Below, in pieces: positions 41,799 through 49,499 of a DNA stretch of 64,000 bases. The DNA is taken from contig OU015567.1 of assembly GCA_907165135.1 (NCBI GenBank), positions 8,184,001 to 8,248,000 on the forward strand. Reading direction: 5' to 3'. The notes beneath the pieces were generated by a model. The model had not been told where the DNA came from. It did not search any database and saw only the letters and a program-made list of their open reading frames with translations. The DNA is from Oikopleura dioica (taxonomy: Eukaryota > Animalia > Chordata). A program made the translations under genes and the position numbers. Position 1 is the first letter of the stretch. The number at the start of each line of letters is the position of its first letter.

Positions 41799-43896
41799 TC
41801 ACCACTTCCAATGGTCGTTATTTTGATGTGTGTATTTCTCGGTGAGTTCTTGGTTAAACGGCGCGTAGAACTTCCTCACGAGCTCCTTTGTCTTGTCATC
41901 TACTGTATGATTTTTTGAGCTAGAAGTAGGAGAACGTGTAATGATTTTTCTAAGCTCGACAGGGACACTTACCGGCCCTTATCGCCTGCCAAACAGAAGT
42001 CGCCCCGCTCGGACACCTCTCTCGGTGGACGCATGCAATAGAATCCCTTTTCTTCGTCAAAGTAAAAGTTCTCCTCGGTAATCAGTTCCTCCACGCCAGT
42101 GAATTTGGCCACTTTGCGCATCACTTTGCCTGGATTCTCGGTCAATTCCGACGCGTCTAAAAACAACATGTTCTCAAGTTTTAAATACCTGGCGTATTGC
42201 GCGATATGAAGAGGATACAGGCCTCCAGTAAGTAAAACATCGGGAATTCTTAGAGGATAAACTCGTTCTGAAAGAGGAGCATCCCAGCGAGAATAGTAAT
42301 CTTTCACGTGATGGCGGATTTCTTCTGAGCTTAATTCATCAGGCTTTGTTTTGGATTCGAATTAGAGGTTATCAAGGATATATCTATTTTATGTTATCTT
42401 GATATAACGATTCAAAAAAATATGTAACATTATTAAATTCGAATATTATTCAAGCTTAACTATAATTAAACAAATTAGAATCCCAAGCAATGAGCCCTTT
42501 AAAATCTTCCTCATTGCAATCTCGATGACTTCCGTAAAGTTCCCATGTCCCTGTAAGTAGTACCAGCCAGGCATTGACAGTTCTCCCTTCTCCTTCGTTT
42601 TCTAAATGAAACTTTTGATTGAGCGCTTAGTTGAAAATGTGAGAAAATCCCCCAATCTCGAGGGGGAAATTGGCGGCTGCACTCGAGACTGGAGTGAGTG
42701 ATTCTTCCAGCGAAGGCCTCTCTTTACCTGGACCACTCCAGCATGGAGAAAGTGGCTATACGCGCGATGCACGGGATCGCACATGATCGAGATGATTTTA
42801 ACGCTGTCGTTCATCTGCGCCATTCTTTCTGGAACAAAAGGCCGGTCGAAGTAGTCCGGGGTCTTTTCGTACGTAACTTCGTCGGAGTAAGAGTAGGGCA
42901 TCTGATTCAAATACCAATCGAATCCCATCTTCCAGTTTGTCGGCCGGTTGAAGAAATGCTTCTCGCCAGGCGTGTCTCTCAACTTTGGATGGTAGTTCAT
43001 AAAAATCTTGAGCGCGCTTGTGCCGCACTTCTTCGCCCCGACAATGATGACTTGAGGAAAGCGCTTCTTCGGGATCTCGGTTCCATGAGCGACTTGGCGT
43101 CGTCGATTGCCCCCGATTTTGTAGAATTCTGAGAGCTTCTTTTTCATTTCTTCGGGAATAGCAAGCCCGTTCATTTCCGGACTTGTCGTTACTGTCAGCG
43201 GCGAAGAATTGTTTGCAACAGGAGATGTGGTCGTCGTCTCTTGAGTTTCAGGAACGAATTCAAGCTTGTTTTGATGAGCGATAGAAAATTCTCCATTTTC
43301 GATTCTCCTTGTTAGCAATAATGGAACACTTGTTGTTTGTATCTTCTGCAAATTAGTGTTACTCACGTATCCATACTCGTAGTATCCAACAGATCTAAAC
43401 GGATTTATTATTTGCTCGCTCGAGCAAGAATTTTCTGTGAAGTAAGATGTTTACATGTGTTCAAGTTAAATCAAATCCGCGCAGCTGAGATCTGCCGGGA
43501 AGTCCTCCGGGGAGTAGCTTACATAATACTAAGTACCCACTTGTTGGCTTGAAACAACAAAAACAAATGATTCTCGATAGAAGCTAAAAACCGAACTTTA
43601 ATAAAAAAGGTTCTCTTGTGATAAAATTTTATCTTTTGAAATAATTACTCATAATTGTAGTCGTCTTTCAGGGTTCTTCTTTGAAGTCGGTGCAATCTCG
43701 ATTCTTTGAACACAAAACAGAGTACTCCTACTGATAGAGCAACCATTATTCTGATAATTTTGGAGACTCCTGAGATAACTCGAGATGATCGCCGTATCGC
43801 TCTCCTGAAAATTTATCTGTAAAAATTTTCAGATGGCAAGAATATTTACCTTTGCTCTTTATCATGATATCGAATCGCCACTAATTGGCTCTTCAT
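41799..43896 (-). CDS. HS3ST: Heparan sulfate glucosamine 3-O-sulfotransferase-like
   Basis: Type II TM (IIRIMVALSVGVLCFVF, ~43700-43760), 5'-PSB PQVIIVGAKKCGTSAL, EKTPDYF, 3'-PB DPVHRAYSH, GLYPLHI, FYFDEEKGFYC..CLAGDKGR, KFYAPFN. Confidence 0.9.
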
Positions 43897-44217: not shown

Positions 44218-45721
44218 TTAAAGTCCGTGAGCAGCGACGGTCTGGCGAACCCAACTATCAGTTGTGAAAGCCGAAGTATAAAGCCCGGGCCATCCTTCCC
44301 AGGCACAGCCTTGTCCTCTAGAAACGACACCCATGAGTGTTGCTTTTCCGTCGACTGGGCAGACGAGGGGTCCGCCAGAATCACCCTGGCAAGCGTCAGA
44401 GCCAGGATCGGTCTTTCCATCGCCATCAATGTCAGGTTTGGATGCGCAGATATCATCTGCTTGAAGAGAAGAGAAGTAAGAATTCGCAACGCAGTATTCT
44501 GCGCTGAGAATATTCACTCCAACTGATAGCAATGTCGCACTTGAGGAACCCCCTGAGCTGGTCGTACCCCAGCCTGCGACCCAACAGCCAGCACCATGTT
44601 CCTTATCAGCTTTTGGAAGACAAGCAGGTCGAACTTGATTGTCTGGATCAGAAGCGATGATATCATTATTGAACTTGATGAGGCAAACATCGTTGTTTTG
44701 TGAGTTTCCATCGGCGACACGGGAGCCGTACTCAGGATGATTAAACCAGGCGGTGGCTTGGAGCTCATACTCGTTGCTATCCCATGCAGATCGATGCAGA
44801 TCTCCGAATCGGGCGTAAATCGTCTGTATACCTTCGCAACAATGAGCAGCGCTCATTACCCATCTGTTGGCAATCACGCTACCGCCGCAAGAATACCACC
44901 AAGCATCATTTTCTTCGTCTTGCAGACTCAAGTGGGCGATCCAAGGCCAAGCGTTGTCGCCGGCTTCTACTCCCCGACGATTTTTCTTCGCTAGACAGAC
45001 TTGTAAGTTCGGGGAAATTCTGTGCCTCAGAGCAAGTTTGAAGACCAGGAGTGATTGAATTGCTCAGTGGGGCGAATTCAGTCGGTGGCACCGTTGGAGG
45101 CTCAGTTGGTGCCTCAGTGCCTTGTCCTCTGCAAGATCTCTTCCAGAAATTCCTATTCCACGATGGCTTTTTGAAATTTCCGCGAACACAGAGAACTGCT
45201 CCTTTAATCTCTCCATCCTCGCAGACGACGTTAAACATCGCCCGTCTGGGGTTGACGATATTCTTCAATACGAGGCCTCCATCCTCAATAGTGATTGTGT
45301 CTGCTTTGACTTCACACATATGTGGTGGCCTAGGAGCGCAGGAGAGGGAAGTTCCCGCTGGTAAGTTCCTAGAAATTGAATAAATGGATCTATAAACAAT
45401 GATTTTGTCTTACTTTTTAACAATCTTCGGTGATTTTTGGCATCTTGCGACGAATTTCGGAGCAATTCTACCTGGCTTAGTTTTCCAAGTCTTTATAAAT
45501 CCGTCATTGCACCTTGGGAAGCACCAGATATTTGCAACTTGCTGTCCAAGCTTTGGACAGTTCCAGTATCCATTGTCGATAGGAAACTCGTTCTTTGTGT
45601 CTTCTACTTTTGATTCACAGGTTTCTGCTCTCTGTGCTCTTACTGCAGGAACGAAGGCTTCATATCTCTTCTCGTAATGTGCGGCGACCTGAGTGGCGAG
45701 GAAAAATTGCGACAACTTCAT
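44218..45721 (-). CDS. Secreted trypsin-like serine protease with two Cys-rich N-terminal modules; 1-nt frameshift in the IVGG activation motif
   Basis: Signal peptide MKLSQFFLATQVAA; triad motifs SAAHC, NNDVCLI, GDSGGP; S1 Asp (SDACQG). IVGGVEAG needs G5 but the sequence has G4 at 44972-44975. Confidence 0.9.
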
Positions 45722-46509: not shown

Positions 46510-47179
46510 TTAAGTATGAATAAGATCACTCAATTTATATTCTAAGCTGGAATAAACTTCAACTGTATTGTAGAGAAAAATGAATATTCAGAACCAAAGT
46601 TAGCTATAATAAACAAATTGCTTGCATACAGCGCATCCCAATAAAATATGGATAATATCATCTAATATATATAAGGAGCTGAGTTTTGAGAAAAGTTTAT
46701 CAAACGTTACCAAGAGAGAAAAATGAAAGTACTTCTTATTCAGTTTTATCTTTCGATTGCTGGTCCATTGAAAAATATGACGGCATGATAATTCCAATCA
46801 GTTTGCAGGCTGATTTTAACGTTGACAGATCTGCTGACTCGAAACATGGAACACATGGGCAAATTGTCCTTGACAGAGACAGGTTCTAATAAGTTCAATT
46901 GTTCAGATTTAAATTTATTGAAAGACAAAAACTACACTTCGATCGAATCAATCAGTACGGACTTCTCGATGGATTTTTCTGACTCCCTTTTCCCACTACT
47001 ACTAGAATAAACACTCATTTTCCATGAATTTAACTCGATGCAACGTCGTTATGGGGCGTATCAGGAACACATGTTAGAACGCATCATCTTGTAAGACTTT
47101 TTGATTATGAGAATTCCAGCAGCTGAGGAATCTGCATTTGTGCACGTTCAAACACGAGACTAGTAAACGGCCAAAAATT

Positions 47180-48351
47180 ATGAAATTCTTGCCTTTTCAT
47201 GTTGCAATTGCTCAGGCAGCTTACGTAAATGAATGGATACAGAATTCGCTGTAGAGACGCTTTTTTATATCAAGCTTGAAATCGTTCTAGTCATTACTTA
47301 TCCATGAAACGCAGCAAACTCATAATTACCCGGATTTCTTTGATCCCTCAATTCTACCAGAGGGATTTAGCGATGATGTGGCGCTGGCTAAGTGGCTTGA
47401 AGGGATGAAATTTCAACGTGAAATGATGGAATTAGAAAAAGCAAAACACGTACCAAAAGGTAAGCAAATCGACTGGCGATGTGAGGAGATTTCGTTTTCG
47501 ATGGATGGGAGAGATCGATGTCAGGTAAGTGGCATTATTAATTCGATTGAGAGGGAGACATAGTAATTCAAGTTTGATGCGGAAACAACCCTCTGCAATT
47601 GCGCGGAGCTGCGAGCAAACAAAAGACTCGTCCGGTACTCACTTCCTTCTCACTCAGATCTCGACGATGGAGATGGCATTCCCGTAGTCATGATTTACCA
47701 CGGCTGGACAGTTAGCTCGATCACTTCTTTTCGAACAGAAGATGACTACTATTGTCAGAATAATAAAGTAAGGGTCACACAGGCTCTTCTTAATGCGGGT
47801 TATGCTGTTTTTGCCCCGTCAGCATCAGCTCTTGGAGATAATCAAGACGGTGGCGAATGGGCTTACTGGCTCACTAATATTCCTGGCTACAACAATCTCG
47901 ACAACTGGACAAAAGTTCCGATCACGAAATGCTCATCGACCTCTGGTCCCAGCTTTCTCGCGGCCTCCACGGATATAAATTCAACCTGAACAAAATCCAC
48001 GCAGCTGGACTCAGCTCTGGAGGTTTCATGACCAGCAGAATGGGCTTTTCCTATCCTGGCATGTTCAGCTCCCTCTCCATCAATGCTGGCTCTTACTACA
48101 ACTGCGATGGCATTTGCGACAAGTACTTGGATGAATTCGAAAAGAGATTAATTGATCTGCATCCTCCCACTCAAATCTTACAGGGAAGCACAGATCCTGT
48201 CGTAATTCCAAGCGCAAACGTTGACTACGATCGCGAGCTCAACAGAAGAGATTGGATCCCAAATCGAAGGATTCTGCGGGATCGAGTTGGACATAGATGG
48301 CTTGACGAGTCTCCGGAGCTCATCCTCGATTGGATAAATACCCACAACTAA
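47180..48351 (+). CDS. phaZ: Secreted extracellular medium-chain-length polyhydroxyalkanoate depolymerase (PhaZ)-like alpha/beta hydrolase; 1-nt frameshift at 47911-47914
   Basis: Exons 47180-47224, 47291-47524, 47573-48351 (GT-AG introns). Product contains GIPVVMIYHG, QALLNAGYAVFAPSA, WLTNIPG, AAGLSSGGFMTSRMGFSYPGMF, NAGSYYNCDGIC, HPPTQILQGSTDPVV, VGHRWLDESPELILDWINTH, colinear with the bacterial GK13-type PhaZ as I recall it. Confidence 0.85.
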
Positions 48352-48691
48352 TACACCAGCTGATTTGAATAAATTACCTTCAAATATAATTCTAAATAAC
48401 CCTTGTTGGAACTTCTGTGAAGATTTTCTACTACGTCAAATTTAATATGCCCAATTTAACGAAGAGTCCTTCTGGAAGTGCAATTAAGCCGCTTAACGAA
48501 TGGGAAAAGGGACGAAATTCCCTAAAGAAACGATTCTTTGAGTTTCATCCCCTTTGAGGATATATGATGTAATAATTTATTGCATCAAAAGATAATTGTC
48601 AGATAAAAGATCTAATTGAACGAATAAATAAGTAAATGTTGCACTAATGTCGAACTTGAACTGACAGAAACTTGACCTCTGAAGCGATTTC

Positions 48692-49499
<808 letters not shown>

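What the first reader, a model, noticed from the sequence alone, without database searches (positions are those of the whole stretch)
47180..48351. Intron-containing, secreted homologue of a bacterial medium-chain-length PHA (bioplastic) depolymerase in an animal genome
Seen in the sequence: three exons joined by 66-nt and 48-nt GT-AG introns. Exon 1 encodes a signal-peptide-like start (MKFLPFHVAIAQAAY-SLL). Exon 3 carries the whole catalytic domain without introns: PVVMIYHG, QALLNAGYAVFAPSA, WLTNIPG, lipase box GLSSG followed by GFMTSRM, GSYYNCDGIC, HPPT..QGSTD (Asp) and GHRW (His), ending SPELILDWINTH. Established knowledge: the extracellular poly(3-hydroxyoctanoate) depolymerase PhaZ of Pseudomonas fluorescens GK13, as I recall it, has the same blocks in the same order (PVVLIYQG, GYAVIAPSA, WQTNIPG, GISSGGYNTSRM, GSYATCSGPLC, HPPTLFLHG..D, GHEW, SP..VLAWFNAH). 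Inference: horizontal acquisition by a bacterivorous filter feeder, followed by addition of host secretion exons, could let it digest the PHA granules of its prey. I know of animal PHA depolymerases only from the short-chain type, so an mcl-type enzyme may be undescribed. Caveat: one A is missing at 47911-47914.
Basis: partly seen in the sequence, partly recalled or inferred. Interest (0 to 1): 0.93.

Follow-up and report, generated by a model that had tools for sequence, protein, structure and literature searches.

The report
Oikopleura mcl-type PHA depolymerase homologue
The tunicate Oikopleura dioica carries an intact, intron-containing gene for a probably secreted esterase of the family known from bacterial medium-chain bioplastic (PHA) depolymerases. 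The apparent frameshift is an assembly error, and the closest relatives are in protists, not bacteria.

Summary
The gene is real and sits at the stated place. Its last exon matches NCBIfam e_dPHAmcl (extracellular mcl-PHA depolymerase) end to end, and the Ser-Asp-His triad, an HG motif and two Cys pairs are conserved.

- **Frameshift:** the missing A at 47911-47914 is an assembly error. Short-read contigs of near-identical DNA and all relatives have A5.
- **Public model:** CAG5111990.1 (O. dioica OKI2018_I69, chr2) hides the error behind a spurious 185-nt intron that deletes 62 core residues.
- **Intron 1:** A spliced mRNA contig from a sister lineage and the public model support 47231-47314 (GA-AG, 84 nt). 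The corrected protein has 346 residues.
- **Selection:** orthologues in three other Oikopleura-type lineages show strong purifying selection (dN/dS about 0.05), conserved synteny and intron turnover.
- **Expression:** shown only in a sister lineage.
- **Origin:** in the tree the gene lies in a clade (support 97/94) with diplonemid, Picozoa and other eukaryote sequences. All 28 bacterial genome sequences lie outside it, so a direct bacterial transfer is not shown.
- **Family score:** the orthologues score 150-171 bits, below the 270-bit equivalog cut-off, so the PHA substrate is inferred.
- **Literature:** the papers I found describe only scl-type animal PHA depolymerases.

The scan had noted this locus before only on this same window.

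The parts
47180..47230 (+). Exon 1: start codon and hydrophobic leader (MKFLPFHVAIAQAAYVN), a putative signal peptide
   Evidence: The public model CAG5111990.1 was reproduced exactly with this exon end. The homologous junction is seen in spliced mRNA L092 against genomic L091. The strongest hydrophobic stretch (Kyte-Doolittle, 10 residues) scores 1.3-2.3 in four lineages. No signal-peptide predictor was run.
47231..47314 (+). Intron 1, 84 nt, non-canonical GA-AG.
47315..47524 (+). Exon 2: an Oikopleura-specific N-terminal extension with a predicted long helix, then the first residues of the catalytic domain (DWRC...RCQ, conserved Cys codons 47480-47482 and 47519-47521)
   Evidence: The NF050057 match starts at profile position 2, at residue 72 of P0284. 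The AlphaFold model has helix 38-60, low pLDDT up to residue 80, and a confident fold from about residue 86. dN/dS against L001 is 0.15.
47525..47572 (+). Intron 2, 48 nt, GT-AG, phase 0, with in-frame stops
   Evidence: L001 has a 45-nt intron at the same position. L091 lacks it, with a precise junction.
47573..48351 (+). Exon 3: most of the alpha/beta-hydrolase domain, including the stop codon 48349-48351
   Evidence: NF050057 matches at 45 and 107 bits. Alignments A2 and A4. dN/dS is 0.05 against L003, and synonymous sites are saturated against L001.
47911..47914 (+). A4 run where the assembly lacks one A (true state A5), the cause of the apparent frameshift
   Evidence: read laying reports 'put in behind 47910: A' in the X1 contig (depth 234 of 234) and in an X3 contig. 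A5 is also present in L001, L002 and L003 and in P0299.
47768..47952 (+). Spurious 185-nt GT-AG 'intron' of the public gene model, which deletes 62 core residues to step over the frameshift
   Evidence: the exons 47180-47230, 47315-47524, 47573-47767 and 47953-48351 translate exactly to P0306 (CAG5111990.1).
47699..47704 (+). HG motif (His130-Gly131), the likely oxyanion-hole region
   Evidence: for the coordinates. G131 is a nearly invariant column in A4. The role as oxyanion hole is inferred from general alpha/beta-hydrolase knowledge.
48013..48015 (+). Catalytic Ser235 in the lipase box G-L-S-S-G
   Evidence: Invariant column in A2 and A4. Coordinates.
48103..48117 (+). Invariant Cys pair (C265 and C269), a likely disulfide
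   Evidence: Invariant columns in A2 and A4. Coordinates.
48193..48195 (+). Catalytic Asp295 (GSTD)
   Evidence: Invariant column in A2 and A4. Coordinates.
48292..48294 (+). Catalytic His328 (GHRW)
   Evidence: Invariant column in A2 and A4. Coordinates.
48368..48373 (+). AATAAA, 17 nt after the stop codon, a candidate polyadenylation signal
   Evidence: The function is not tested.

Best explanation
This is an intact, selected nuclear gene of Oikopleura dioica. It has three exons and encodes a 346-residue protein once the assembly's missing A is restored.

**Protein layout**
- A short hydrophobic leader, presumably a signal peptide.
- An Oikopleura-specific extension of about 55 residues, partly helical.
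- A single alpha/beta-hydrolase domain of the extracellular mcl-PHA depolymerase family (e_dPHAmcl). It has Ser235 in a G-L-S-S-G box, Asp295, His328, an HG motif and two conserved Cys pairs. There is no separate substrate-binding domain.

**Likely function**
The protein most likely acts as a secreted serine esterase that cuts ester bonds of hydrophobic polyesters from ingested bacteria. Medium-chain PHA is the leading candidate substrate.

**Origin**
The gene belongs to a eukaryote-type branch of the family shared with heterotrophic protists. It was not recently taken from any sampled bacterium.

**Shown:** homology, intactness, conservation of the catalytic residues, purifying selection, orthology and synteny across lineages, and transcription with splicing in a sister lineage.

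**Inferred:** secretion, the site of expression and the substrate.
For: - **Family match.** NF050057 e_dPHAmcl hits both pieces of the window protein (45 and 107 bits, profile 27-108 and 114-251). It covers full-length orthologues end to end (profile 2-251 of 252, 150-171 bits).
- **Catalytic residues.** The triad and the Cys pairs are invariant across 17 and 60 sequences.
- **Fold.** AlphaFold gives a confident alpha/beta-hydrolase fold (pLDDT 80.5, core above 90). Esterases, lipases and a PHB depolymerase (8daj) are its structural neighbours.
- **Intact frame.** A5 is present in the short-read contigs of X1 and X3 and in P0299.
- **Selection.** dN/dS is 0.05 against L003 (dS 0.33). Against L001, pN is 0.07 with synonymous sites saturated.
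- **Host gene, not contamination.** The gene has introns that differ between lineages. Its neighbours are animal genes: a trypsin-like protease, an adenylate kinase and a sulfotransferase. The adenylate kinase synteny is kept in L091. X1 covers the region with a 41-kb contig.
- **Expression.** L092 is a spliced transcript of the sister lineage. P0284, P0285 and P0291 are full-length products on contigs too short to hold the intron.
- **Organism.** The exons translate exactly to CAG5111990.1 of O. dioica OKI2018_I69 chr2.
- **Phylogeny.** A 31-row clade (UFBoot 97, SH-aLRT 94) holds Oikopleura, diplonemids, Picozoa and Phalansterium. None of the 28 bacterial genome loci is in it.
Against: - The score is below the 270-bit equivalog cut-off. 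Bona fide bacterial members score 270-384 bits. The substrate may therefore have diverged.
- There are no RNA reads from the window's own lineage: X18 gave none and X19 gave two partial reads. The organism's presence in those runs was not shown.
- No signal-peptide predictor or localisation data were available.
- Many members of the 'eukaryote' clade are unlabelled metagenome or transcript contigs.
- L003, a related lineage, carries a TAG at the Trp codon two codons before the A-run.
Confidence: 0.55

Rival explanations
1. The gene and fold are as described, but the eukaryote-type branch has a different natural substrate, such as triglycerides, wax esters, cutin-like or algal polyesters, or short-chain PHA. 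The PHA-depolymerase name would then be family history only.
For: Orthologues score 150-171 bits against a 270-bit cut-off. The whole eukaryote clade scores 180-230 bits. The structural neighbours are general esterases, lipases and feruloyl esterases. No solved structure or assay exists for this branch. UniProt names it only 'carboxylic ester hydrolase'.
Against: The best-scoring family by far is e_dPHAmcl, matched end to end. The next families are other PHA depolymerases at 38-44 bits. The bacterial relatives are concentrated in predatory bacteria, with 58 of the 80 best loci in Myxococcota plus one Bdellovibrio. That fits use on prey polymers.
Confidence: 0.33
2. One reading: a direct, fairly recent transfer from a bacterium into the Oikopleura lineage, followed by the addition of secretion exons.
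For: The family is overwhelmingly bacterial, with 343 confirmed loci in species-representative bacterial genomes. No other annotated animal was seen among the labelled hits. The leader and the N-terminal extension lie in their own exons.
Against: The best bacterial identity is 31-42%. All bacterial genome sequences lie outside the 97/94-supported clade that holds Oikopleura with diplonemids, Picozoa and intron-bearing marine contigs. The gene is old within the group, with synonymous sites saturated between lineages. Paralogues or orthologues of 40-65% identity with short introns exist.
Confidence: 0.15
3. Pseudogene: the frameshift is real and the locus is decaying.
For: The window reads A4. 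L003 has a nonsense codon nearby. No RNA reads were found in X18 or X19.
Against: X1 (near-identical DNA, depth 234) and X3 have A5. P0299, 99% identical, is intact. dN/dS is 0.05.
Confidence: 0.03
4. Bacterial or protist contamination of the assembly.
For: The enzyme family is of bacterial type.
Against: The gene has spliceosomal introns and animal genes on both sides. A 41-kb contig in an independent assembly covers it. The same locus, with adenylate kinase synteny, is found in other lineages. It lies on a 16-Mb chromosome record.
Confidence: 0.01

Closest known systems
Extracellular mcl-PHA depolymerases of bacteria (NCBIfam NF050057 e_dPHAmcl; from memory the type enzyme is PhaZ of Pseudomonas fluorescens GK13, with a Bdellovibrio enzyme also described)
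   Same: The profile match runs end to end. The order of motif blocks is the same. The Ser (G-x-S-S-G), Asp, His triad, the HG motif and two Cys pairs are shared. Both have a single catalytic domain without a C-terminal binding domain, plus an N-terminal export leader.
   Different: Identity is 31-42%, and the score is 150-171 bits against a 270-bit cut-off. The lipase box is G-L-S-S-G or G-F-S-x-G instead of G-I-S-S-G. There is an extra N-terminal extension of about 55 residues, and the gene has spliceosomal introns. It sits in a separate eukaryote-type clade. Activity is untested.
Eukaryote-type branch of the same family: EukProt proteins of the diplonemids Rhynchopus humris and Flectonema neradi and of Picozoa sp. 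SAG31, plus unlabelled marine contigs
   Same: They fall in the same well-supported clade, have sub-threshold e_dPHAmcl scores (177-229 bits) and share the catalytic residues.
   Different: Identity to the Oikopleura protein is only about 33-44%. They lack its N-terminal extension. None is characterised.
Animal PHA depolymerases of Zeidler et al. 2026 (PMC13642032): dPHAscl domain type 2 family, in 66 animal species of nine phyla
   Same: The proposed biology is the same: secreted alpha/beta-hydrolases that let animals and protists use microbial storage polyester from their food.
   Different: It is a different family. NF050059 (scl type 2) gives only 28-30 bits, around the lipase box. That paper does not mention mcl enzymes or Oikopleura. 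Its enzymes were assayed on PHB and PHB/PHV.
PHB depolymerase family esterase of Lihuaxuella thermophila (PDB 8daj)
   Same: It is the best sequence match among solved structures (E 9e-5, around the nucleophile). It also has the highest query-normalised TM-score among the 50 matches listed (0.54).
   Different: Identity is 13% and the family is different. No structure of an e_dPHAmcl member was found.

Membership tests
e_dPHAmcl (NCBIfam NF050057, extracellular mcl-PHA depolymerase) | Whole-protein HMM score at or above the curated equivalog cut-off of 270 bits | tested here: not met
   The window pieces score 45.3 and 106.6 bits. Intact orthologues P0284 and P0292 score 150.5 and 171.4 bits. 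Bacterial members score 264-384 bits.
e_dPHAmcl (NCBIfam NF050057, extracellular mcl-PHA depolymerase) | Homology over the whole catalytic domain, and best match among all families | tested here: met
   The match covers profile positions 2-251 of 252, with E 5e-44 to 2e-50. The next families score 38-44 bits.
e_dPHAmcl (NCBIfam NF050057, extracellular mcl-PHA depolymerase) | Catalytic triad: Ser in a G-x-S-x-G lipase box, then Asp, then His, in this order | tested here: met
   S235, D295 and H328 are invariant columns in A2 and A4. Codons are 48013-48015, 48193-48195 and 48292-48294.
e_dPHAmcl (NCBIfam NF050057, extracellular mcl-PHA depolymerase) | Single-domain architecture without linker or C-terminal substrate-binding domain (from established knowledge of the family) | tested here: met
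   The protein ends with the hydrolase domain. No other Pfam or NCBIfam domain was found.
e_dPHAmcl (NCBIfam NF050057, extracellular mcl-PHA depolymerase) | Exported protein (signal peptide) | tested here: inconclusive
   The hydrophobic N-terminus is conserved in four lineages. No predictor or experiment was available.
e_dPHAmcl (NCBIfam NF050057, extracellular mcl-PHA depolymerase) | Hydrolysis of poly(3-hydroxyoctanoate) or other mcl-PHA | not testable with these tools
   This needs a recombinant enzyme assay.
e_dPHAmcl (NCBIfam NF050057, extracellular mcl-PHA depolymerase) | Phylogenetic position among characterised or bacterial members | tested here: not met
   The gene lies in a separate clade (97/94) that contains none of the 28 bacterial genome loci.
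Animal/protist PHAD, dPHAscl domain type 2 (Zeidler et al. 2026; NF050059) | Sequence membership in the scl type 2 catalytic domain family | tested here: not met
   Only 28-30 bits against a 280-bit cut-off, limited to about 45 residues around the nucleophile.

The most novel reading that the evidence does not exclude
Oikopleura and a set of heterotrophic marine protists (diplonemids, Picozoa and others) share a eukaryote-specific branch of the mcl-type PHA depolymerase family. This would be a second, independent enzyme family by which an animal digests bacterial storage polyester. It would extend the reach from short-chain to medium-chain PHA in one of the ocean's most abundant filter feeders.
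Probability: 0.4. Interest if true: 0.7.

Novelty: new member of a known kind. Interest (0 to 1): 0.55.

Why it matters
Animal PHA depolymerases were described only in 2026, and only for the short-chain type 2 family (PMC13642032). An active mcl-type enzyme in Oikopleura would be a second family in animals. Appendicularians are major grazers of marine bacteria and picoplankton, so it would also add a route for microbial storage carbon into the food web.

The eukaryote-type clade found here (diplonemids, Picozoa, Oikopleura) also suggests that the family has a history inside eukaryotes that is not yet described.

There is a practical result too. The public OKI2018_I69 gene model is wrong here, because a one-base assembly error was hidden behind a false intron.

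Tried and rejected
- **Pfam:** it gave nothing above threshold on the pieces.
- **PDB sequence search:** only a weak match to a PHB-depolymerase-family esterase, so no family structure exists to compare with.
- **ESM Atlas feature search:** only generic alpha/beta-hydrolase clusters.
- **Expression in the window's lineage:** not shown. X18 gave 0 reads and X19 gave 2 partial reads, and nothing shows that the same lineage is in those runs.
- **Homologue search with the 145-aa piece:** it could not see full-length relatives because of the length window. A mixed alignment, A3, solved this. A single-sequence search with P0284 found only its own cluster.
- **Structure of the window's own protein:** I could not fold it, because no reference reads through the frameshift. 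I folded the 71%-identical orthologue P0284 instead.
- **Alternative exon-1 donor:** a donor homologous to L001's (GT at 47251) is in the wrong phase, so I rejected it.
- **Supplementary tables of Zeidler et al.:** not held, so I could not check whether Oikopleura also has the scl-type enzyme.
- **Unlabelled clade members:** I could not label most of the metagenome contigs in the eukaryote clade. Their eukaryotic origin rests on EukProt labels, introns (L007, L008, L089) and transcript-like contig sizes.

Full report
**1. What is in the sequence**

Frame 1 from the ATG at 47180 gives a short hydrophobic start. After two interruptions it continues into a long open stretch. That stretch changes frame by one base at the run AAAA at 47911-47914 and ends at the stop 48349-48351.

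NCBIfam NF050057, the model for extracellular mcl-PHA depolymerases, matches both halves. Residues before the shift match profile 27-108 (45 bits, E 7e-12). Residues after it match profile 114-251 (107 bits, E 1e-30). Pfam gives nothing above threshold.

**2. The frameshift is an assembly error**

I laid contigs of two DNA runs on 46900-48600. The X1 contig is 41 kb long, has depth 234 and shows no substitution over 1701 nt. Its single difference from the window is one extra A behind 47910. A contig of X3, from another study, has the same extra A.

Environmental contigs of three related lineages also read A5. One of them encodes P0299, which is 99% identical to the window protein and reads straight through (NWTKSSDHEM).

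The window's exons translate exactly to the public protein CAG5111990.1 (Oidioi.mRNA.OKI2018_I69.chr2.g6255.t1, Oikopleura dioica) when spliced as 47180-47230, 47315-47524, 47573-47767 and 47953-48351. So the public model steps over the error with a false 185-nt intron that removes 62 residues of the hydrolase core. This match also identifies the organism independently of earlier notes.

**3. Gene model**

- **Intron 2** (47525-47572, GT-AG, 48 nt) stands. The Bergen-type lineage (L001) has a 45-nt intron at the same place. A third lineage (L091) lacks it, with a precise junction.
- **Intron 1** needs correcting. The JGI contig L092 matches genomic L091 in two blocks that leave out exactly 78 nt. 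It is therefore a spliced transcript, and its junction is ...LN|QS.... The homologous borders in the window are 47230|47315, giving an 84-nt GA-AG intron. These are the borders of the public model.
- With these borders the corrected protein has 346 residues. It aligns without any gap to the 346-residue mRNA-derived P0284.
In X3 it is mutated (47290 G>A). In L091 it would leave an in-frame stop.
- The catalytic domain begins in exon 2, since the profile match starts at residue 72 of the orthologue.

**4. A host gene under selection**

- **Neighbours.** The flanking genes are animal genes: a trypsin-like protease (44218-44931, minus strand), a sulfotransferase-like ORF (42602-43366, minus) and a convergent adenylate kinase (48862-49493, minus). 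The adenylate kinase neighbour is kept in L091.
- **Selection.** Against L003, dS is 0.33 and dN 0.017, so dN/dS is 0.05. Against L001, synonymous sites are saturated (pS 0.78) while pN is 0.07.
- **Intron content varies.** L001 and L002 have two extra introns (44 and 47 nt) inside the window's exon 3. L091 lacks intron 2.
- **More distant relatives.** Marine contigs L008, L007 and L089 carry homologues of 40-65% identity with introns of about 50 nt.
- **Expression.** It is shown only for the sister lineage. L092 is a spliced transcript. P0284 and P0285 sit on contigs too short to hold the intron. P0291 comes from the 'merc' collection, which I recall as assembled from Tara Oceans metatranscriptomes. 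The two RNA runs of the species label gave no usable reads. This is no test, because the lineage's presence in those runs was not shown.

**5. Protein and likely mechanism**

In alignments of 17 and 60 family members the following are invariant: the Ser of the G-x-S-x-G box, an Asp, a His and a Cys pair (C265 and C269). A second, N-terminal Cys pair and the Gly of the HG motif are nearly invariant. The window protein has all of them, as Ser235, Asp295 and His328.

AlphaFold on the orthologue P0284 gives a confident alpha/beta-hydrolase core. Residues 1-80 are of low confidence and contain one long helix (38-60). Foldseek finds esterases, lipases, feruloyl esterases and a PHB depolymerase. No structure of this family itself was found.

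The N-terminus is hydrophobic in four lineages, and there is no further domain.

The most likely mechanism is a secreted serine esterase acting on hydrophobic polyester from ingested bacteria. Secretion, the site of expression and the substrate are inferred.

**6. Relatives and origin**

An exhaustive HMMER search of 1.84 billion representatives found only 178 clusters with E up to 0.001. The best is 44% identical.

In species-representative bacterial genomes, 343 loci were confirmed. Of the best 80, 58 are in Myxococcota, 14 in Pseudomonadota, 4 in Actinomycetota and one each in Bdellovibrionota and Planctomycetota. Identity is 31-42%.

Bona fide bacterial members score 264-384 bits on NF050057, while the eukaryote-labelled ones score 177-229 bits. 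Phalansterium is the exception at 319 bits. Oikopleura scores 150-171 bits.

In a maximum-likelihood tree (LG+C20, 80 rows) Oikopleura groups first with the intron-bearing contigs P0004 and P0066 (94/95). This group lies inside a 31-row clade (97/94). That clade holds all eukaryote-labelled sequences (Rhynchopus, Flectonema, 'Hpha', Picozoa, Phalansterium and another EukProt transcript) and none of the 28 bacterial genome loci. The bootstrap had not fully converged, so the support values are approximate.

Two diplonemid-type homologues lie on contigs of 0.98 and 2.86 Mb in which all, or all but one, of the called genes point the same way.

A direct bacterium-to-Oikopleura transfer is therefore not supported. 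Transfer from another eukaryote, or old eukaryotic ancestry with many losses, fits better. I saw no other annotated animal among the labelled hits, but most hits carry no label.

**7. Comparison with what is known**

The only paper on animal PHA depolymerases in the library (Zeidler et al. 2026, PMC13642032) describes enzymes of the dPHAscl type 2 family in 66 animal species and 18-19 protist species. It does not mention mcl enzymes or Oikopleura. Searches for eukaryotic mcl-PHA depolymerases, and for Oikopleura together with 'depolymerase', found nothing relevant.

The protein is in UniProt as E4YEB4_OIKDI, 'carboxylic ester hydrolase', without characterisation.

I file it as a new, animal member of a known enzyme family, on a eukaryote-type branch. 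The family's score criterion is not met and the activity is untested.

**8. Verdict**

Intron 1 and the start of the catalytic domain needed correction.
- The pseudogene caveat is removed.
- The HGT-from-bacteria story is weakened, and the PHA substrate is plausible but unproven.
- Interest is moderate to fairly high for people working on PHA turnover or on Oikopleura gene acquisition.

Noticed in passing
window 47768-47952: The public gene model CAG5111990.1 (OKI2018_I69 chr2 g6255) contains a false 185-nt intron that compensates for a one-base homopolymer error of the assembly and deletes 62 core residues. Other models of this assembly may hide similar errors.
   Followed up: yes
window 47231-47314; L091:31-108: Intron 1 is non-canonical: GA-AG in the window and exactly TA-AG in the genomic contig L091. 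The spliced transcript L092 proves removal of the TA-AG version, and the junction cannot be shifted.
   Followed up: partly
L001:912-955 and 1083-1129; L091: Intron turnover between Oikopleura-type lineages. There are two extra short introns in the Bergen-type orthologue. Intron 2 is absent in a third lineage, where the neighbouring adenylate kinase also reads without the introns seen in the window.
   Followed up: partly
L003, at the position homologous to window 47907: A metagenome scaffold of a lineage at dS 0.33 from the window has TAG instead of the conserved TGG (Trp), two codons before the A-run. The gene there is otherwise under purifying selection. It could be a null allele or a sequencing error.
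   Followed up: no
window 44218-44931 (-), 42602-43366 (-), 48862-49493 (-): The neighbours are a trypsin-like serine protease ORF, a sulfotransferase-like ORF and a convergent adenylate kinase with short introns. I saw no evidence that the proximity is functional.
   Followed up: no
P0244 (EukProt, Phalansterium solitarium): Unlike the other eukaryote-labelled relatives, this one scores 319 bits, above the bacterial equivalog cut-off. It could be bacterial contamination of the transcriptome or a separate recent acquisition.
   Followed up: no
L004 and L005 (ENA contigs of 0.98 and 2.86 Mb): Homologues matching diplonemid transcriptome proteins lie on very long contigs. All called genes point the same way in L004, and all but one in L005. 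In L005 a second alpha/beta-hydrolase gene lies directly upstream.
   Followed up: no
If real, it could act downstream of PHA depolymerisation. I did not check it.
   Followed up: no
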